Virus record (IMG/VR): IMGVR_UViG_3300033997_000243
Location: 255,519 to 319,518 of that record
DNA: 64,000 nt
Reading direction: 5' to 3' (one strand)
The notes under the pieces are model-generated. The model made no database searches and had not been told where the DNA came from. It saw only the letters and a program-made list of their open reading frames with translations. Made by a program: the position numbers and the translations under genes. Every line of letters begins with the position of its first letter. The stretch's first letter is position 1. This document shows positions 44,315-52,659 of this stretch, in pieces.

Positions 44315-44370
44315 ATTATAGCAAAAATCTAGGATCATGTATATAGCTATTTTTGACACACTTGGATCAG
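44315..44370 (-). promoter_or_regulatory. Class-I promoter cassette P9
   Basis: GTGTGTCAAAAA-N6-TATACA-N17-TATAAT. Confidence 0.85.
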
Positions 44371-45138: not shown

Positions 45139-45770
45139 ACATCACCAAAAGCTTTACGCGCACACATTAAAATCATTTCCGCAGTATCTTCAATACTAAC
45201 TCCATTTATGTCGAAAGTGACTAAACTTTTCGCAACAGTATGATCCATATTGCTAAGAGCAAACATGCGGTCATATTCGGCACCAATCTTTTCTCTGAAC
45301 TCAAAATACTCAAACTCAATTCGATCTTCAGGCTCTTTTACTTTGCCTGAGTTAGTTCCGTAAAAAATCATATCAGGAACCAAGGTATCTAAACTCAGTA
45401 TTTTACGCAGGTTATAAAAGTGCTCAAGTGGAAAACCTTTACCTCCACACTGAAAAGCTCTTGTTGAAAAATCCCAACGATCTGCAACAACATTAACGCC
45501 AGCGGCAAGTTGTGATCTTACGTAAGGAACCAATTGCGCTCTGGCAGCAAACATTAAAAGAGTTTCTGCTTCTACAGTAAACTTTTCATCAGAGTTATTA
45601 GCATTACCTTTTACCACAGTACGTATCTGTTCTGCAATCGGAGTTCCTCCAGGTTCGCGTACTTGAATAGTCGGGCCAAATATTTTAGTAAGATTTGCCG
45701 TCAATATTTTTGCTTGTTCACTTTTACCAACACCATCCAATCCTTCAAGTACAAAAAATTTACCTTGCAT
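45135..45770 (-). CDS. tmk: Thymidylate kinase
   Basis: FFVLEGLDGVGKS, REPGGT, LMFAARAQ, VVADR; start at MQGKF. Confidence 0.93.
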   Translation of the reverse strand: MQGKFFVLEGLDGVGKSEQAKILTANLTKIFGPTIQVREPGGTPIAEQIRTVVKGNANNSDEKFTVEAETLLMFAARAQLVPYVRSQLAAGVNVVADRWDFSTRAFQCGGKGFPLEHFYNLRKILSLDTLVPDMIFYGTNSGKVKEPEDRIEFEYFEFREKIGAEYDRMFALSNMDHTVAKSLVTFDINGVSIEDTAEMILMCARKAFGDV

Positions 45771-45792
45771 AGTTATTTCCCCAGTTAAGATC

Positions 45793-45818
45793 AAAAAAGG
45801 CCACAGCAAAGTGGCCTT
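45793..45818 (-). terminator. Intrinsic terminator closing the structured-RNA region
   Basis: AGGCCAC-TTTGCT-GTGGCCT-TTTTT on the minus strand. Confidence 0.8.
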
Positions 45819-45824
45819 GTGTTT

Positions 45825-46838
45825 AATAGATTTTTGTTCTGACGGCAAAACGCAACAGACTGTAATATGTACTGGTGCTCGAACAAAGCCAGTGCGAAAG
45901 TTGAATCTTACCGTCAGAACAAAAATCTATTTTATTCGGTGGGTTTGTTTTCCTTGTCCAAAATGCGAACAACAAACCCACCTGCTGGATTATTTAATAT
46001 CGGTATTGCGGCTACCGAGATTTGTTCTTACCCTCTCAACAAGATAAGGAGTCATGTAAATAACAAATCGCCAAGCATCATATCAACGAGTGCTTATAGT
46101 GAGCAGGTTTATGCTCCACTTGTACAACGCGAACAGTTAACCAACCTTTAAGGTCAAAGTAATCTGTTATACGTTGAATGTTGGTTGATATGCGAAAACT
46201 TTCTACGGATGACCGCCGTAAATTGTTTTCGCGGTTAATACAAATCGTTAGAAAAAAGATGAATAGAGTTACCATGAATATTCCTGTATAGCGGCATTTC
46301 AAATACACGACCCAAGAATTGAAGCAAGGAAAAAAGTCCAAAAACCTACAACAATTCAAAGTCTAAACATTGCTTAATGTTAGATTAAGGTTTGTACTCT
46401 CAGCGGGAGTTCGCGTCAGCACGTTCATGTTTTGAAATAACGAATGAGTGCGTGAGATACTCACAATACTAACCGACTTGGAGGGACGCAAGTATTGTCT
46501 CGTTGTTTTTCCTCTATAAGTTCATCAGCACAGCGGCAAGGAAGAATCCGCCTCACACAAAACTTTTTCAAGGACTGCTTAAACTAATGCCGCGAAAAAT
46601 TAGAATGCCTGTTCGACACAACTTGCTTGGAACCCCACGTACCTAAAAGGAGATCGAACAGACAAAGATGTTAAAGGAGATTCCACTAAAAATCTCGAAG
46701 TTAGGCTACTTCGTATAAAGTCTAGTCAAGGGATCTAGCTTGACATAATAAACTTTGCACTGCATACCAGCGCACAAGCAACGGCTGTTCTGACCTAAGA
46801 CAAAAAATGTCTCTGCTTGCAGATCTAAAGTGGAATCT
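45825..46838 (-). ncRNA. Candidate large structured ncRNA, or a cluster of ncRNAs (about 1 kb)
   Basis: No credible CDS; dense run of stems including a perfect 21-bp stem; minus-strand terminator at the end. Confidence 0.55.
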
Positions 46839-47169
46839 ACTTTAACATATTCAAAATATCTTCAAATTCTTCTGTAGTCAATTGGTTTCGTTCAACTAAA
46901 ATTTTCATGTAATTCAAATACAAACCTTTTGAGTAAGAAGTTTGGGCTATCAAGAATTCTACTTCAGGCCAACGACATTTCTTTTCGCGCAAAACAATTA
47001 AAGCGCATCTGTAAGGTATTCTATTTGGAGGCAAAGAAGTTAAAGCTTGCTTAAGCGTTGTAAATCTTCGCATCTGACTCCAATAAAAAGCGCAGAATTT
47101 TTCTTTGTTGTTAAGTTCAAGAAAATGTTTAGAATAAAATTCAGGGCAATTTAAAAACTCTGGTTCCAT
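46837..47169 (-). CDS. Hypothetical protein
   Basis: 110-aa ORF inside the RNA island. Confidence 0.55.
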   Translation of the reverse strand: MEPEFLNCPEFYSKHFLELNNKEKFCAFYWSQMRRFTTLKQALTSLPPNRIPYRCALIVLREKKCRWPEVEFLIAQTSYSKGLYLNYMKILVERNQLTTEEFEDILNMLK

Positions 47170-47402
47170 AAATGATTACCAAATAAAGATTCCTGTTCAG
47201 TGATACACTTAAACCACCAACTTTTCATAGTCTCCTACGCGGCTAAGTGCATGACTATCTTAAGTTACTTAGCTAACTGAAATAAGTTTAGTGTTGGAAT
47301 CAAAAACTTAGCGCAATCAAAATAACAAAAACTAAAACAAGAGAAAGCAGATAGGGTTTTAATTCTGAATAATCTGGAAGCATTTTTGTTACCTGTTGAA
47401 AG

Positions 47403-47477
<75 letters not shown>

Positions 47478-47519
47478 ATTAACCATGTTTACCTGTTGAA
47501 ACATGGAAAGTCACTGAAA

Positions 47520-47872
47520 AGCAATTTCAACAAACAGCCTCTAGTGGAAAGCATTACACTATAACCATCTATCTTATATGCTTTGATAAACGTGATCAGA
47601 TCGCCAATCAGATTCGGTGGCGCTAATACAAAACAAAGAATTTCTCATGACAGCTACTCACGTATCTCGCATGTCGATGCAAACGAATAAACTTGTTTTG
47701 TAAAACCAGTCTTGCGACCAGAAACAGCACTTAGAGGACGCTAGAGTGCCGAAATAAAAAAGACCGTAAGAAATTCTTACACAAACTATCGGAAAGGATG
47801 TAGCGCAGACACAATCCAGTTCCTGAGTTTAGTTGCCAAACAAATACATGCAAAGTTTGGCAGGTCAGGGAA
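47520..47872 (-). ncRNA. Candidate structured ncRNA (about 350 nt) upstream of the tRNA
   Basis: Multiple stems, a GCAA tetraloop and G-U pairs on the minus strand; no ORF. Confidence 0.55.
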
Positions 47873-47874
47873 AT

Positions 47875-48297
47875 CTATATACTGTCTTTTATAGACAGAA
47901 CTATACGGGCTTCGCCAGTTGTGACTATCTTAACTGCGGTTACAAGATGTTCAATGGATTCCATTTTAGTTTCACCAGCTGGAATTCCGGTAAGCAGATC
48001 AGATAACATCCAATCGGCTGTAATAAATTTTTCCTGTGTTTCCCCATCAGCCGGAAGATCAGGAATATTCGCAAGTTTTATATCAGAAGCTGTGTAGAAA
48101 ATATCTGTTGTTCCACTTATACTGTGAGCCTGCATGGTAAGAAATGAATAATTCTGTGGAACCAACAAAATAAAATCTTTTGTTGGATCAGATGGAACAT
48201 GGTGAGTAAAAATATTTTTGTTGACTTTTAAACTGGCACTTACGTCACCAAGTTGTTCTAAAAACTTTTTACTATTTACTAAAACTATAGGTTTCAT
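47875..48297 (-). CDS. Hypothetical protein
   Basis: 140 aa, AAGGT RBS. Confidence 0.7.
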   Translation of the reverse strand: MKPIVLVNSKKFLEQLGDVSASLKVNKNIFTHHVPSDPTKDFILLVPQNYSFLTMQAHSISGTTDIFYTASDIKLANIPDLPADGETQEKFITADWMLSDLLTGIPAGETKMESIEHLVTAVKIVTTGEARIVLSIKDSI

Positions 48298-48317
48298 TTG
48301 AGTGTACCTTAATGAAG

Positions 48318-48443
48318 TGCTGGTGCGGAAAGCTAGAAGTTCAGGTTTAATGTTCTACTTTCACCCCTAAACCAAAAGCCTTGTGAGTGTAATAACAAAC
48401 TGAGTGAGTTATGTTTAAATTACCTAACATTTCCGCACCAGCA
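48318..48443. ncRNA. Candidate 126-nt multibranch RNA element
   Basis: Perfect 14-bp closing stem TGCTGGTGCGGAAA/TTTCCGCACCAGCA enclosing four short hairpins. Confidence 0.5.
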
Positions 48444-48449
48444 AAACTT

Positions 48450-48791
48450 TTAAGATGACTTTTTAGCCGACAGTTTTGGTAAGCCGAAATTATCTAACAA
48501 ACTATCCAGCTTTGATATACGATTTACAGTTTCCTCTGAGCGCTCGTCGATGCAGATAAGAATGTTATCGCGGTGCTGGATCAACTCTTCAATGTAGCCG
48601 ACCAATTGATCCAGTTTTAAGTTTGCCGTACTTTCTTTCAAACGTGTTTTAACATTTGAAATAGTAGAATCGTAACTAAGATCAAAATGATCTTCAGCAA
48701 AAGTAATGAGATCAGAAACTTGTTGACGAGCCTTAACCAGCTTTGCATTTAAAGAAGCACGATCAATTTGAACAGATAATTGTTGCAACAT
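48450..48791 (-). CDS. Hypothetical helical protein
   Basis: 113-aa ORF. Confidence 0.7.
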   Translation of the reverse strand: MLQQLSVQIDRASLNAKLVKARQQVSDLITFAEDHFDLSYDSTISNVKTRLKESTANLKLDQLVGYIEELIQHRDNILICIDERSEETVNRISKLDSLLDNFGLPKLSAKKSS

Positions 48792-48862
48792 TTTAAGATT
48801 CCTATAATAAAGGTGGAACTCTCCTTGTTCCGGTTGGGACGTCCGATTTACCTACGACAACA

Positions 48863-49651
48863 CTAAACTAAAAGGCGAGGGAAATTCAAAAGATTTTCAC
48901 AGGCCACTAAAGCTTTAGACCACATTTCGAGTTGGTCAAAATACTTTTCGTTAAGTTCTTCACGAGTGAACCAGCCAAGGAAGTTTAACTGTTCTTCAAT
49001 TTCAAGAACATCAGCATCTTTGACCTCAACAACATAAACAAGTGCAAGATGACGACAATCAACTGGAACAGCACGACTTGTAATTATGGTATGCAAACGA
49101 GTACCATAAGTGCGCTCCATATAAGTATCGTGATCCAAGGTTTCAGAATAACCTACAATGTTGTGTTGATCTATTCCAAACTCTTCGTCAAGTTCACGTA
49201 GCGTACTGCTAACAAGAGTAGAAGGAATATCCAAAGAATCTTTTTTGTACTCATGGCGATCAACATTAACTGTAGCACCAAAATACGCACACTCGGCCAT
49301 TTCAATATGGCCACCAAAGCCAATACTTAATTTGCCGTGAAGTTGACCTTCAGTTCCTTTTGGTGTACGTGCGTACAAAGCAAATTTTCCGTCATGCACA
49401 ACAGGGATATACGGAATAAAATGTCTGTGTTTAATTGGAGTGAAACGATCTTCAGTATCATCCAATAGTTCGCGTGAAGCACCAAACAAATAAAGCGGGT
49501 TAAAAAGTTCGGCAAACGAAGCGGTGTGTTCGGTAACAATGATAGAGTTTGGCAAACGAGGATCTAAAGATTCAGAAGGATTTGCCATGTGTTCATCAAG
49601 GTAAGCATCGAACTTAGGGTCTAAAGTACCTAAAATTAATTCTGTACGCAT
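48863..49651 (-). CDS. Nudix-family hydrolase
   Basis: LHGKLSIGFGGHI...RELDEEFGI...LEMWS. Confidence 0.85.
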   Translation of the reverse strand: MRTELILGTLDPKFDAYLDEHMANPSESLDPRLPNSIIVTEHTASFAELFNPLYLFGASRELLDDTEDRFTPIKHRHFIPYIPVVHDGKFALYARTPKGTEGQLHGKLSIGFGGHIEMAECAYFGATVNVDRHEYKKDSLDIPSTLVSSTLRELDEEFGIDQHNIVGYSETLDHDTYMERTYGTRLHTIITSRAVPVDCRHLALVYVVEVKDADVLEIEEQLNFLGWFTREELNEKYFDQLEMWSKALVACENLLNFPRLLV

Positions 49652-49661
49652 TTCAAATTCC

Positions 49662-50375
49662 TTAAGCTTTAAGCGCGTAAGTTTCGTCGCCAGCGGATTC
49701 GTCAGATTCTGGAGAAAGACCTAAAGCGTTTTCAACAGAACCTACTTGAGAAGAATCAATTGCAACAGATTCTTTTGTTTCAACTTGATCCGCTGTTGGA
49801 TCGTAACCATCAGGGCCACCACAACAACCGTCTGATCCAATTGGGCCTTCAGATCCATCAACAGAAGTAGATGGAGGAACAGGAAGATTTGAAAACATTT
49901 TCAACAGTGCCATTGCACCAGCTTCCCACGCAGCAATAACTTCAGGACGTTGAAGATTGTATTCAGGTAAATCAGCACCAGAGTAAACTGACTTCCAATT
50001 TGTTGCATCACAATAAGCATTGTAAACTACTTCACCCAATGAAAGTGGAGTACCTTCAGATTGCAAGGAAAAGGTTCCATTTGAGTTGGGTAAAAGTTTT
50101 GGAAATTGTGTCGCTGGAGAATGTGCAGAATAGTAATGACTGGCCCAAACTTCTTTAGCAGGTTTGTCATTAACTGTAATTGGATCTGATTCTGCATCCA
50201 TTTCAGCGCCACCTTTCACATTATGAAAGGTTTTGTATGCAACTATTGCAGCATAATTAACAAGTTGGTCTGAAGTAAATTCATAAACTTGTTTATCGTG
50301 TGAGAAATTTTCACGATCAGCACTTTCCAAAGCAAGTGCTTTGCTAAAAGCAAACGATGTGTTTTCGTAGGACAT
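49662..50375 (-). CDS. Hypothetical protein with ssrA-tag-like C-terminus
   Basis: Start reassigned to MSYENT (GGAGA RBS); ends SAGDETYALKA. Confidence 0.75.
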   Translation of the reverse strand: MSYENTSFAFSKALALESADRENFSHDKQVYEFTSDQLVNYAAIVAYKTFHNVKGGAEMDAESDPITVNDKPAKEVWASHYYSAHSPATQFPKLLPNSNGTFSLQSEGTPLSLGEVVYNAYCDATNWKSVYSGADLPEYNLQRPEVIAAWEAGAMALLKMFSNLPVPPSTSVDGSEGPIGSDGCCGGPDGYDPTADQVETKESVAIDSSQVGSVENALGLSPESDESAGDETYALKA

Positions 50376-50427: not shown

Positions 50428-52659
50428 TTATTCGTCATCAGTATCGATTTTTTCTTTACTGCGTTTGACGATTTGATCTTTGTAGCGTTTCGGGCCTTTT
50501 CCACTTGCACAATGTTTAGAACACCATGTACGAATGTTTCCAGCTTTCTTCAAACCAACTCGCTCACAAACTTCGGTGATTTGTTTTTTACTACCAAGAA
50601 CAAGAACTTTGAAATCTTCAAAGCTTAATTTTTTCGCACCATGCAGTGGAACATCTGGATGGAACTTTAAGTTGTTTCTTGTTCCATCTACATACCCAAG
50701 TTGTTTTAAATACTCAAAGGTATCAAAAACTGGATCGAATCCACGAGCACGACCGTCACCATCAGTAACCCAAACACGCGCCCAAACTTCACGGTTAGGA
50801 ATACCACCGAGTTTGTTTTTGACAGTACGCAAACAGATGAAACGATAAATATCTTTACCGCCTTCAACAGTCACAGAATTTTCTTCCATGATACCTTTAT
50901 CAAGAACAAAACCGTAAGGTGCAGATCCACGAGAAGTAGATTTTATACGAACGTCTGAGTTATGGCTAACAATTCCGTTAGTGATAATTGTATGCGTGTC
51001 AGGCATGTTTGCATCGTAAGTCTGCTCAGCTTCTTGATATTCAATATCGACAATTTCGTCAGTAAGATAATCGACATCGCAAGAAAGATCCAAGACAGAA
51101 ACAGTATAAAAGTTCTCTACCTTTTCTAACTTTGAAAATACACAACTATCAAGAAGTAGTAACTGGAAATCTACTGCGTGTTGGTAGTGTCTGTGGGTAT
51201 TAGTTACAGAACTATATCCTTTAATATAAGCACTAACAAGATCGGAAGATCCTGTCCTTATATTAAATGGAACTCCATGTAAGGAATCCAACTGACCTAA
51301 ACCTACCTTGACGCCTGTATTATAAGCATCTTGATAATCAAGATCAGAATTGCTTGATACAGGTCTAGTAATTTCGTTTGATGGTTTAATCAAAACAAAT
51401 TTACCAACAGTCAAAGAATCAAGTCTAGCAAATTGATAGTTACTTGGTGATTTAGCTTGGTCATTAGCTAAAACCTGATGTCCATGTTTGCCGCGCAGTG
51501 TATAGCCATTTGATGTAGTAATTTTAATGATATTATCTACACCAGTATCGTCGAAGATTGTCGGAGATTCCAAACCGCATTTACCTTGAATTTTAGGTAA
51601 AGAGTGTCTGAATTTTTCGTAGTATTCTTCAACAGATACCAACCCAAGTTCTGTTCTGATTCGAGTTTCAGGTGCCAGACAGAAAAATTTGAGCGCTTCC
51701 CCGGAAGGCTCATACTCAGGATTACCGTGCATAACAGCAGGACGTAAACGTAATTGGTTTACACCAAAAACAGTCATACGTTTTTTACGCATACCGCTTC
51801 GTACTTTTTTAATACCAGCAGCGTGCATACGTGCTTGTTCTGCCATAGCTTCATTACGATCATCATCATCTAAGCCTTCAGGCAACATGGCCGGATAACT
51901 ATCAACGATTGATACTGCTTGCATAAAGCCATCTGGAGCAGGAATACGAATTTTATTTGTTTTAGTCAAATACTTGACATCGTACTTACCAGAAAACTTC
52001 TTTTTGTTTTCTTGCGTATGTTCGTAAACATACCAATACTTATCACCGATTTTTTGTACGTCAGGCAGTGCGCGACGAAGTTTTGCTTGGTAACGATAAA
52101 AATCTTCGCCAACATCAGGCATGTAGTAACGAATTTTTGGTTTAATCAACCAAGAACCAGTATCGTCATCTTTGATACCGAATATTGTAGTAGCATCAGA
52201 TTTTAATCCAAGCGCTTCCATCATGTTACCGATATATTCAATGTCGGTAGAGCCTTCGTAATCAAAAATACTGGCAGCAATTTTTCTGTTTAATTCATCA
52301 ATAGCATTCTGAATCATACAGAGAAGAGTCATTGTCAATGTCGATTTACAGCTTTGTTCACCACCATAAATAGTGTACCAACCGCCACCAACAATACCGC
52401 CATTAAGAAGTAAATCAAGAGCCAACAGCCCTGTGGACAATCTTTTTTCATCACGGTCAACCAAACTGCTTGAAAGGCCATATTTCTTTTCAACACCATC
52501 AAGCAAATCATCGATGTCGTCAGCAGGAGAATAACCACGAGCATCTTCAATAGCAGAGTCTACAATTTCTTTGGCAGACTTGCCTTTTGATTTACCCTTT
52601 TTCTTTGACTCTTCTACAGCAACGTCATCATCAATGTCTAACTTTTTCTTTTTAGCCAT
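50428..52659 (-). CDS. recA: RecA/UvsX-like recombinase, intein-containing
   Basis: LSTGLLALDLLL.GG, IYGGEQSCKST, DYEG, IVDS, VNQLR, PSGEALKFF/SDVRI, VKNK. Confidence 0.93.
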   Translation of the reverse strand: MAKKKKLDIDDDVAVEESKKKGKSKGKSAKEIVDSAIEDARGYSPADDIDDLLDGVEKKYGLSSSLVDRDEKRLSTGLLALDLLLNGGIVGGGWYTIYGGEQSCKSTLTMTLLCMIQNAIDELNRKIAASIFDYEGSTDIEYIGNMMEALGLKSDATTIFGIKDDDTGSWLIKPKIRYYMPDVGEDFYRYQAKLRRALPDVQKIGDKYWYVYEHTQENKKKFSGKYDVKYLTKTNKIRIPAPDGFMQAVSIVDSYPAMLPEGLDDDDRNEAMAEQARMHAAGIKKVRSGMRKKRMTVFGVNQLRLRPAVMHGNPEYEPSGEALKFFCLAPETRIRTELGLVSVEEYYEKFRHSLPKIQGKCGLESPTIFDDTGVDNIIKITTSNGYTLRGKHGHQVLANDQAKSPSNYQFARLDSLTVGKFVLIKPSNEITRPVSSNSDLDYQDAYNTGVKVGLGQLDSLHGVPFNIRTGSSDLVSAYIKGYSSVTNTHRHYQHAVDFQLLLLDSCVFSKLEKVENFYTVSVLDLSCDVDYLTDEIVDIEYQEAEQTYDANMPDTHTIITNGIVSHNSDVRIKSTSRGSAPYGFVLDKGIMEENSVTVEGGKDIYRFICLRTVKNKLGGIPNREVWARVWVTDGDGRARGFDPVFDTFEYLKQLGYVDGTRNNLKFHPDVPLHGAKKLSFEDFKVLVLGSKKQITEVCERVGLKKAGNIRTWCSKHCASGKGPKRYKDQIVKRSKEKIDTDDE
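50959..51681 (-). mobile_element. Intein (241 aa) in RecA
   Basis: Starts CLAPETRI, ends TYDANM...ITNGIVSHN followed by Ser. Confidence 0.92.

What the first reader, a model, noticed from the sequence alone, without database searches (positions are those of the whole stretch)
47520..47872. Second structured ncRNA candidate directly upstream of tRNA-Gly
Seen on the minus strand: CUGGUC-GCAA-GACUGG (GNRA tetraloop, 47706-47721), CGGCACU/AGUGCUG, a long-range AAGAAUUUCU/AGAAAUUCUU pairing (47636-47778) and a nested CCUGA/UGCCAAAC stem (47822-47869). An interleaved UACAAAACAA/UUGUUUUGUA pairing (47627-47702) suggests a pseudoknot or switch. Inference: a ribozyme-like or GOLLD/ROOL-like RNA released by tRNA processing.
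Basis: partly seen in the sequence, partly recalled or inferred. Interest (0 to 1): 0.65.

Follow-up and report, generated by a model that had tools for sequence, protein, structure and literature searches.

The report
Conserved structured RNA beside phage tRNA-Gly
The 400 bases between a small gene and the only tRNA gene of an uncultured 320-kb phage encode a conserved, folded non-coding RNA that fits no known RNA family, though its function and exact ends are still unknown.

Summary
The window is the end of a 319.5-kb jumbo-phage genome whose only tRNA is tRNA-Gly(UCC), 47403-47477, minus strand. The stretch upstream of it (47478-47874) is non-coding and matches no Rfam family. It is under clear constraint. 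It is 91% identical to a relative in which four-fold synonymous sites of the flanking genes are 56% identical. It diverges 2.5-3 times more slowly than the adjacent ORFs at three depths of comparison. Its consensus fold is far more stable than column shuffles on the minus strand only (z -4.5 to -4.9; plus strand -1.7; coding controls -0.5 to -1.9).

A covariance model of the core (47594-47752) finds diverged copies in two further phage lineages. There, 17 of 47 base pairs show compensatory changes.

The UACAAAACAA/UUGUUUUGUA helix covaries. The long-range AAGAAUUUCU/AGAAAUUCUU pairing breaks in relatives, which removes the basis for a pseudoknot or switch. The GNRA loop is not conserved.

The distant copies sit after the same upstream gene but not next to a tRNA, so release by tRNA processing is at most lineage-specific. 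GOLLD, ROOL and ribozyme membership fail. Verdict: a real, new phage RNA family of unknown function.

The parts
47875..48297 (-). 140-aa ORF of unknown function (predicted beta-sandwich). Its homologues lie immediately 5' of the RNA element in every lineage that has the element.
   Evidence: ORF list. No PHROG hit. Homologues are 75% identical in L014-L016 and 25-27% in L031/L033. Structure model has pLDDT 63, and Foldseek gives only generic beta-sandwich matches.
47764..47874 (-). Domain I, a branched 5' domain. Helices: H2 GACC/GGUC; H3 UGCCAAAC/GUUUGGCA with an invariant 13-nt loop; H4-H6 arm; H7 GUAAGA/UCUUAC. Present only in the window-type and L015-type lineages.
   Evidence: RNAalifold consensus and pair counts. 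Coordinates checked. Absent from L031/L033. Only one-sided compatible changes, no compensatory pairs.
47752..47763 (-). Invariant single-stranded U-rich linker, UCUUUUUUAUUU.
   Evidence: Alignment A3. Not flagged as a terminator by the scan.
47594..47752 (-). Conserved core. Helices: H8 47751-47725; H9 47721-47706; H10 47702-47692 with 47637-47627, enclosing H11, H12 (47683-47666) and H13 (47662-47646); H14 47622-47602. Conserved unpaired motifs: CUGGUUUUACAA, UAGCU, GAGAA.
   Evidence: CM R1 hits L031:5419-5575 (E 3.5e-4) and L033:5484-5637 (E 3e-3). In alignment A7, 17 of 47 pairs have compensatory changes, against 7.4+-1.8 in shuffles and 1-3 in slid controls. Independent MFE folds of L031 and L033 reproduce H9, H10 and H14.
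47511..47595 (-). Domain IV, a long irregular hairpin (H15 UCAC/GUGA, H16, H17, H18). One compensatory pair among close lineages. Poorly conserved in L031/L033.
   Evidence: alignment columns 305-368, AU to GC. CM R2 gives only weak partial hits in L031/L033.
47483..47513 (-). Conserved UGACUUU motif plus the 3' hairpin H19 (CCAUGUUU-CAACAGGU-AAACAUGG). L031/L033 have GAGUUUC-AAUAU-GAAACUC at the same place.
47478..47482 (-). Variable 5-nt linker (UUAAU, or CCCAA in the L015 type) between H19 and the tRNA 5' end. This is the expected RNase P cleavage point.
   Evidence: Alignment. RNase P cleavage is inferred from general tRNA biology and was not tested.
47403..47477 (-). tRNA-Gly(UCC) with encoded CCA; the only tRNA gene in the 319.5-kb genome.
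   Evidence: ARAGORN on the window and on the whole genome. Rfam tRNA model, 59.9 bits.

Best explanation
Window 47478-47874 (minus strand) encodes a conserved, multi-helix non-coding RNA. It belongs to a previously undescribed family found so far only in a small clade of uncultured jumbo phages.

Shown:
- The stretch is not protein-coding.
- It evolves several-fold more slowly than neutral sites and than its flanking genes.
- The constraint is strand-specific and preserves base pairing through compensatory changes.
- A core of about 160 nt (H8-H14), plus a 3' hairpin, persists in lineages whose neighbouring protein is only about 26% identical.

Inferred:
- It has no promoter of its own and is transcribed as the 3' continuation of the 140-aa gene's transcript.
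- In this phage the precursor runs on into tRNA-Gly, so RNase P cleavage at 47477/47478 would leave an RNA that ends just after the 8-bp hairpin H19. That hairpin would shield it from 3' exonucleases.
- The 5' end is either at the ORF stop or in the invariant U-rich linker at 47763-47752.
- The combination of invariant unpaired junction and loop sequences with covarying stems suggests that the mature RNA works through a defined tertiary fold that binds a protein or another RNA. That is, it acts as a processed stable RNA rather than a passive spacer.

It sits in a 2-kb island of structured RNA around the tRNA.
For: Non-coding: stops in all frames, and seven 1-nt indels between lineages.

Constraint: 90.9% identity to L015, against 56% at 310 four-fold sites in six flanking genes and 74% in the adjacent ORF. 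The candidate diverges 2.5-3 times less than the ORFs in the pairs window-L019, L014-L015, L015-L016 and window-L015.

Structure:
- Consensus energy is -95 kcal/mol against -69+-5 for column shuffles (z -4.9). The plus strand gives z -1.7. Four coding controls give -0.5 to -1.9.
- Substitutions break 7-9 pairs of the window's own MFE structure, against 15-16 expected for random placement (P 0.003 and 0.007).
- Four compensatory pairs appear among close lineages.
- After adding L031 and L033, 17 of 47 pairs are compensatory; 0 of 500 shuffles reach this, and slid controls give 1-3.
- Model-free folds of L031 and L033 give the same H9/H10/H14 layout with different stem sequences.

Co-transcription:
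- Neither of the two promoter-like motifs recurrent upstream of genes in this genome lies within or just upstream of the element. The nearest AACTGTAAATC is at 48531.
- The only sigma-70-like match, at 47927-47900, is not conserved.
- In L031 the element starts at the ORF's stop codon.
- A 3.2-kb contig from a library labelled RNA-Seq spans 47447-50054.
Against: - There are no raw reads, so transcription, strand, ends and abundance are unproven. The RNA-Seq-labelled runs may contain DNA, and contig depth cannot resolve the element from the upstream genes.
- There are only about four effective lineages. The 17 compensatory pairs were counted on an alignment fitted to the model's structure.
- Unpaired columns vary no more than paired ones (paired 27 of 246, unpaired 24 of 157; p 0.22). 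A sequence-level or DNA-level constraint is therefore not excluded.
- All four intergenic regions in this 12-kb stretch are 85-94% identical to L015.
- The related phages G002 and G003, locus L032 and phage NCTB have no detectable copy.
- Adjacency to a tRNA is not conserved.
Confidence: 0.55

Rival explanations
1. The element acts in cis. It would be a structured 3' UTR or inter-cistronic leader that sets the stability of the 140-aa gene's mRNA and/or controls processing and read-through into whatever lies downstream: tRNA-Gly here, a 98-aa ORF in L031/L033. There would be no independent trans-acting RNA product.
For: The element always starts at or next to the stop codon of the 140-aa ORF homologue. 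No conserved promoter lies in front of it. An invariant AU-rich single-stranded linker flanked by stem-loops (47763-47752) looks like an RNase E-type site; this is inference. The hairpin immediately before the tRNA could influence RNase P access.
Against: About seven covarying helices with invariant junction sequences over 160-400 nt is far more than an mRNA 3' stabiliser needs. The downstream gene differs between lineages, which argues against a gene-specific regulator. In L004 the tRNA-Gly has no such leader. No terminator-like site was found in the element.
Confidence: 0.25
2. The constraint is at the DNA level, for example a replication origin, a packaging site or a cluster of protein-binding sites. 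The RNA fold would be incidental.
For: Unpaired columns are as conserved as paired ones. The region is AT-rich and holds inverted repeats.
Against: The signal is strongly asymmetric between strands (z -4.9 against -1.7). Many conserved G-U pairs and one-sided changes between G-C and G-U make sense only in the minus-strand transcript. Compensatory changes keep the pairing while the sequence changes. There are no iterons or direct-repeat families, and no copies elsewhere in the genome.
Confidence: 0.05
3. The stretch is an ordinary spacer. Its high identity would reflect a recent recombinational exchange between lineages, and the helices would be chance features of AT-rich DNA.
For: Single-sequence z is only -1.65. 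Phage genomes are mosaic, and identity along this locus varies from 55% to 100%.
Against: The same 2.5-3-fold slowdown appears at three independent depths of divergence. The conserved block begins exactly at the ORF stop. A recognisable core persists next to a protein that is only 26% identical. Substitutions avoid breaking pairs.
Confidence: 0.05
4. The element is a self-cleaving ribozyme or other catalytic RNA that processes the precursor.
For: It has a complex fold with invariant junction nucleotides and sits between an ORF and a tRNA, that is, at a processing site.
Against: No match to any Rfam ribozyme family at E<=10 within the element; the only ribozyme-class hit in the region lies outside it on the plus strand (RAGATH-13, 48842-48885, 17.8 bits against an 80-bit threshold). 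The core is larger than the known small self-cleavers. There is no experimental hint.
Confidence: 0.05

Closest known systems
GOLLD and ROOL RNAs (large ornate RNAs of phages and prophages)
   Same: They are encoded by phages and prophages, often near tRNA islands, and GOLLD sometimes has tRNAs inside its linker. They have many helices, no known protein partner and unknown function (PMC12286853, read). In this window, a structured RNA abuts the phage's only tRNA, and a second, larger structured non-coding stretch lies about 570 nt beyond the tRNA, past a 110-aa ORF.
   Different: The Rfam models give no match at E<=10 on two lineages. The element is smaller (about 400 nt, with a conserved core of about 160 nt) than about 580 nt for ROOL (from my own knowledge) and over 800 nt for GOLLD (PMC12286853). 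tRNA adjacency is not conserved in distant members. Multimer or cage formation was not tested.
Phage T4 rnaC and rnaD (species 1 and species 2 stable RNAs)
   Same: These are small stable RNAs of still unknown function encoded in the tRNA cluster of a large lytic phage, right beside tRNA-Arg (annotation; 'RNAs of yet unknown functions', PMC9697503). Processing from a tRNA-containing precursor is from my own knowledge.
   Different: The T4 RNAs are 139 and 119 nt and lie 3' of the tRNA, whereas this element is about 400 nt and lies 5' of it. Models R1 and R3 find nothing in the T4 tRNA region.
sRNAs derived from 3' UTRs, and structured mRNA 3' ends in bacteria
   Same: The element starts at the stop codon of a conserved ORF, has no promoter of its own that I could find, and ends in a stable hairpin.
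   Different: Such sRNAs are usually 50-150 nt with a seed region and a Rho-independent terminator. This element has seven or more covarying helices and no terminator.

Membership tests
GOLLD RNA (Rfam) | Match to the family covariance model (conserved 3' domain) | tested here: not met
   cmscan of all 4227 Rfam 15 families found no GOLLD hit, either at gathering score on the whole window or at E<=10 on 45700-49000 and on L015:6300-8650.
GOLLD RNA (Rfam) | Length of 800 nt or more, with a variable 5' domain and a conserved 3' domain | tested here: not met
   The element is 397 nt with a core of about 160 nt.
GOLLD / ROOL | Encoded in a phage or prophage near tRNA genes | tested here: met
   A jumbo-phage record; the element abuts tRNA-Gly. 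In L031/L033 it lies about 0.6-0.7 kb before tRNA-Met.
ROOL RNA (Rfam) | Match to the family covariance model | tested here: not met
   No hit at E<=10.
GOLLD / ROOL | Homo-oligomeric cage assembly | not testable with these tools
   Needs native gels or cryo-EM.
T4 rnaC / rnaD stable RNAs | Sequence or structure similarity to the T4 RNAs | tested here: not met
   R1 and R3 searches of NC_000866 69000-74000 (L029) gave no match at E<=10.
T4 rnaC / rnaD stable RNAs | Accumulates as a discrete stable RNA processed from a precursor that contains a tRNA | not testable with these tools
   Only contigs were available, not raw reads.
Small self-cleaving ribozymes (hammerhead, twister, pistol, hatchet, HDV-like) | Match to a family model | tested here: not met
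   No hit within the element. The only ribozyme-class hit in the region is RAGATH-13 at 17.8 bits against a threshold of 80, at 48842-48885 on the plus strand, outside the element.
Intrinsic terminator | GC-rich hairpin directly followed by a U-tract | tested here: not met
   The scan found no site on the minus strand in 47478-47874. The U-run at 47763-47752 follows a 4-bp closing stem of a branched domain.
Plain tRNA 5' leader | Exists only as the sequence removed by RNase P, with no constraint of its own | tested here: not met
   The stretch is as conserved as the tRNA itself (90.9% against 93.3%), and the core persists where no tRNA follows.
Protein-coding gene | An open frame kept among relatives | tested here: not met
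   Stops in all six frames and seven 1-nt indels between lineages.

The most novel reading that the evidence does not exclude
The element and the about 1-kb structured non-coding stretch beyond the tRNA (45790-46836) are parts of one new class of large 'ornate' phage RNA system organised around tRNA genes. It would be functionally analogous to GOLLD and ROOL, for example a self-assembling RNA scaffold or a decoy acting on host tRNA or translation or on tRNA-targeting defences, but with an unrelated fold.
Probability: 0.15. Interest if true: 0.8.

Novelty: new variant of a known kind. Interest (0 to 1): 0.6.

Why it matters
Large structured RNAs of phages that sit near tRNA genes (GOLLD, ROOL, T4 rnaC and rnaD) are a long-standing puzzle. 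Their folds are elaborate and their functions unknown.

This locus adds an unrelated family with the same genomic habit. It has a compact, covariation-supported core of about 160 nt that is small enough for chemical probing, structure determination and binding studies. Next to it lies a second, larger structured RNA. The same clade also shows its tRNA genes being gained, cut down and lost while the non-coding RNAs are kept. That contrast could help separate the role of these RNAs from the role of the tRNAs themselves.

Tried and rejected
- Rfam at gathering score and at E<=10 on the window and on L015: only the tRNA matched.
- blastn of the region against 50,697 phage records: only the tRNA matched.
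- tblastn of the 140-aa protein against phages: nothing.
- IMG/VR protein-based and pattern scans and the metagenome scan returned only a 99%-identical relative.
  - The pattern was built with the L015-type 4-nt spacer, so it could not match the window type; this was my slip.
  - The 20-mer scan of prokaryote genomes gave three hits in high-GC bacteria, at the number expected by chance.
- DNA and CM searches of related phages found no copy: G002 (L004), G003 (L005), L032, NCTB and the T4 tRNA region.
- CM R2 for the 3' half gave only weak partial hits in L031 and L033 (E 0.5 and 5.7).
- Decayed tRNA in the stretch: rejected. No further tRNA-model hit appeared at E<=10.
- Small ORFs: rejected.
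- A conserved sigma-70 promoter at 47927-47900: rejected, because it is not conserved.
- Trans targets for the invariant H3 loop: the complement occurs 1 time exactly and 3 times with one mismatch elsewhere in the genome. Permuted motifs do as well in 5.5% of trials, and the sites share no context, so I dropped this lead.
- Function of the 140-aa neighbour: the AlphaFold model has pLDDT 63, Foldseek against PDB and BFVD gives only generic beta-sandwiches with TM<0.55, and the Atlas features gave only unnamed viral clusters.
- The catalogue of 10,006 viral structured-RNA candidates (PMC10690425): its motifs are 29-151 nt, and its supplements are not held as text, so membership could not be checked.
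- Read laying was used once, on 5,901 letters.

Full report
CONTEXT. The window is bases 255519-319518 of a 319,518-bp virus record with direct terminal repeats. Genes are dense and mostly on the minus strand. The UvsX-like recombinase is at most 59% identical to any protein encoded in the deposited phage records; the nearest are phage NCTB and the Erwinia jumbo phages of the Y3 type. The genome has a single tRNA gene, tRNA-Gly(UCC), at 47403-47477 on the minus strand, with an encoded CCA. The finding concerns the 397 nt between the stop codon of a 140-aa ORF (47875-48297) and that tRNA.

OBSERVATION. On this one sequence they are only weakly beyond chance. RNAfold gives z -1.65 for the minus strand and -1.50 for the plus strand. 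Two perfect 10-nt inverted repeats occur in 2% of dinucleotide shuffles. Sliding-window z-scores in the stretch (-2.5 and -3.1 at best) are no better than elsewhere in the neighbourhood. Rfam finds nothing but the tRNA, even at E<=10.

RELATIVES. IMG/VR and the JGI metagenome collection hold only a 99%-identical phage (L002) and two distant ones (L004, L005). In the distant ones the syntenic position carries unrelated sequence and other tRNAs. At that stage the stretch looked like a fast-evolving spacer.

The word-based protein search with the 140-aa ORF then found a 75%-identical homologue. Its encoding contigs (L014, L015, L016) have the same gene order. In them the non-coding stretch aligns end to end.

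CONSTRAINT.
- Window against L015: 359 of 395 aligned bases are identical (90.9%). The tRNA itself is 93.3% identical, the adjacent ORF is 74%, and 310 four-fold degenerate sites of six flanking genes are 56% identical.
- The conserved block begins exactly at the ORF's stop codon.
- The element diverges 2.5-3 times less than the two upstream ORFs in every pair examined, at about 1-3%, 3-7% and 9-26% divergence. This argues for a lower substitution rate rather than one recent recombination event.
- Seven single-base indels between lineages, together with stops in all frames, exclude coding.

STRUCTURE, CLOSE LINEAGES. RNAalifold on seven sequences gives 121 pairs in 19 helices.
- Four pairs show compensatory double changes. 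Two are in the UACAAAACAAG/UUUGUUUUGUA helix (H10), one in the CGCCA/UGGCG hairpin (H14), and one in AAAGCA/UGCUUU (H16). About nine further pairs show one-sided compatible changes.
- The consensus energy (-95 kcal/mol) lies 4.9 sd below column-shuffled alignments. The reverse complement scores only -1.7.
- Four coding stretches of the same length from the same loci score -0.5 to -1.9.
- I also used the window's own MFE structure, which was predicted without the alignment. The substitutions seen in L014 and L015 break 7 and 9 of its pairs, where random placement would break 15-16 (P 0.003 and 0.007).
- The many conserved G-U pairs fit an RNA read from the minus strand, the strand of the tRNA and of all neighbouring genes.

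- H10 is supported.
- The long-range AAGAAUUUCU/AGAAAUUCUU pairing is perfect only in the window type. In L014-L016 it has 2-3 internal mismatches, because the 3' arm changed while the 5' arm did not. The 5' arm instead forms a local hairpin that is kept in all sequences.
- With one of the two crossing helices gone, nothing supports a pseudoknot or switch.

STRUCTURE, DISTANT LINEAGES. Homologues of the nearby NUDIX-like 262-aa protein (54-58% identical) led to contigs L031, L032 and L033.
- A covariance model of the core built only from the close lineages (R1; window 47594-47752) hits L031:5419-5575 (E 3.5e-4) and L033:5484-5637 (E 3e-3). Both hits lie directly after the homologue of the 140-aa ORF, which is only 25-27% identical there.
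- On the model-made alignment, 17 of 47 pairs carry compensatory changes. Shuffles give 7.4+-1.8, and none of 500 reaches 17. Partner-slid controls give 1-3. Overall 97.4% of cells are paired. This alignment is fitted to the structure, so it leans towards it.
- Plain MFE folds of L031 and L033, made without any model, recover the H9 hairpin, the long H10 helix enclosing an inner domain, and the H14 hairpin, each with different stem sequences.
- Conserved unpaired motifs (CUGGUUUUACAA, UAGCU, GAGAA, UGACUUU) sit between covarying stems.
- Differences in the distant copies: they lack Domain I (47764-47874), have a different Domain IV, and have 8-12-nt loops in place of the GCAA tetraloop. They keep a 3' hairpin with a compensated stem.
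- A broader model (R3) finds no copy in the L004 and L005 phages, L032, NCTB or the T4 tRNA region.

TRANSCRIPTION AND ENDS.
- Two motifs recur upstream of genes in this genome: GTGTGTCAAAAAT followed by TATAAT, and AACTGTAAATC. Neither lies in or just before the element; the nearest is at 48531, inside the 113-aa ORF.
- The only sigma-70-like match, at 47927-47900, is not conserved.
- The element therefore most likely rides on the transcript of the 140-aa gene.
- In two wastewater libraries labelled RNA-Seq, contigs carry the element. In X5 it is part of a 3.2-kb contig that runs from 50054 to 47447. In X6 a 165-nt piece (47514-47678) has a depth of 12.4, against 6-8 for the upstream ORFs.
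- These are assembled contigs, and the libraries may hold DNA. Strand, ends and abundance remain unknown.
- RNase P cleavage at the tRNA 5' end is an inference from general tRNA biology. It would leave the 8-bp hairpin H19 plus 5 nt at the RNA's 3' end. In L031 and L033 an ORF follows instead of a tRNA, so this route to a 3' end cannot be general.

INTERPRETATION. The best reading is a functional, folded non-coding RNA of a new family, made as the 3' extension of the 140-aa gene's transcript and probably matured into a stable RNA.
- A purely cis-acting role (mRNA 3' stabiliser, processing platform or read-through control) is the main rival.
- DNA-level function, chance, and catalysis are minor rivals.
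- The 140-aa neighbour gave no clue: no family hit, a moderate model, and only generic beta-sandwich matches.

COMPARISON WITH KNOWN RNAS. By genomic habit the element resembles GOLLD and ROOL (phage RNAs near tRNA islands, function unknown; PMC12286853) and the T4 stable RNAs rnaC and rnaD beside tRNA-Arg. It fails every membership test that could be run. It is therefore a new family within a known kind of phage RNA.

LIMITS. There are about four effective lineages, all from metagenomes. There are no raw reads, the host is unknown, and the function is unknown.

Noticed in passing
window 45790-46836 (minus strand): An about 1-kb stretch between the 110-aa ORF and the thymidylate kinase gene has no gene called in any relative. 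It shows very strong conserved structure (alifold z -6.2, -3.75 and -9.0 for three of four sub-windows, -1.1 for 46600-46330; the plus strand also scores -3.75 and -7.9 for two of them), with obvious compensatory helix changes. It ends in a conserved terminator at 45818-45797.
   Followed up: partly
window 46330-46600: In the RNA-Seq-labelled wastewater runs, a short contig here is much deeper than its neighbours (X5: 300x against 3-46x; X6: 28x against 7-15x). It covers a block (46381-46500) that is 97-100% identical between lineages. It is either a very abundant small RNA or a unitig shared by many co-occurring strains.
   Followed up: partly
between window 47184 and 47183; L022:216-292; L021, L015, L016 at the same place: A tRNA-Met gene is intact in one relative (L022), carries an internal deletion in L021, is reduced to about 30 nt of its two ends in L015 and L016, and is absent from the window. 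This is tRNA loss caught in stages, while the flanking non-coding RNAs stay conserved.
   Followed up: partly
window 47489-47501 and 47389-47401: A 13-nt direct repeat, TTTCAACAGGTAA, flanks tRNA-Gly. In the L015 lineage both copies carry the same C>T change. It may be a duplication made when the tRNA was inserted into the ribosome-binding region of the small ORF that follows.
   Followed up: no
window 47300-47383 (minus strand): A 27-codon ORF (MLPDYSELKPY... followed by a hydrophobic stretch) starts 20 nt after the tRNA. It has a Shine-Dalgarno-like AGGT, and its N-terminus is conserved in all relatives. It is a possible small membrane peptide.
   Followed up: no
window 50428-52659 (minus strand): The UvsX/RecA-like recombinase gene carries an insertion (about 50956-51681) that L015 lacks (743 aa against 502 aa). 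Relatives have 960-1312-aa versions with intein-splicing and LAGLIDADG domains, so this is an intein site with variable occupancy.
   Followed up: no
whole genome; in the window at 44359, 42544, 30530, 23876, 23160, 21946, 21828 and 10276 (minus strand), and at many AACTGTAAATC sites: There are two recurrent promoter-like motifs. One is a long composite, AACTGATCCAAGTGTGTCAAAAATAG followed by a hairpin and TTTTGCTATAAT. The other is a short AACTGTAAATC about 20-30 nt before ribosome-binding sites. They probably mark two temporal classes of phage promoters.
   Followed up: partly
window 48298-48449 (minus strand): The intergenic region between the 113-aa and 140-aa ORFs has the most negative single-sequence local folding z in the neighbourhood (-5.5 at 48320-48439) and is 89% identical to L015.
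   Followed up: no
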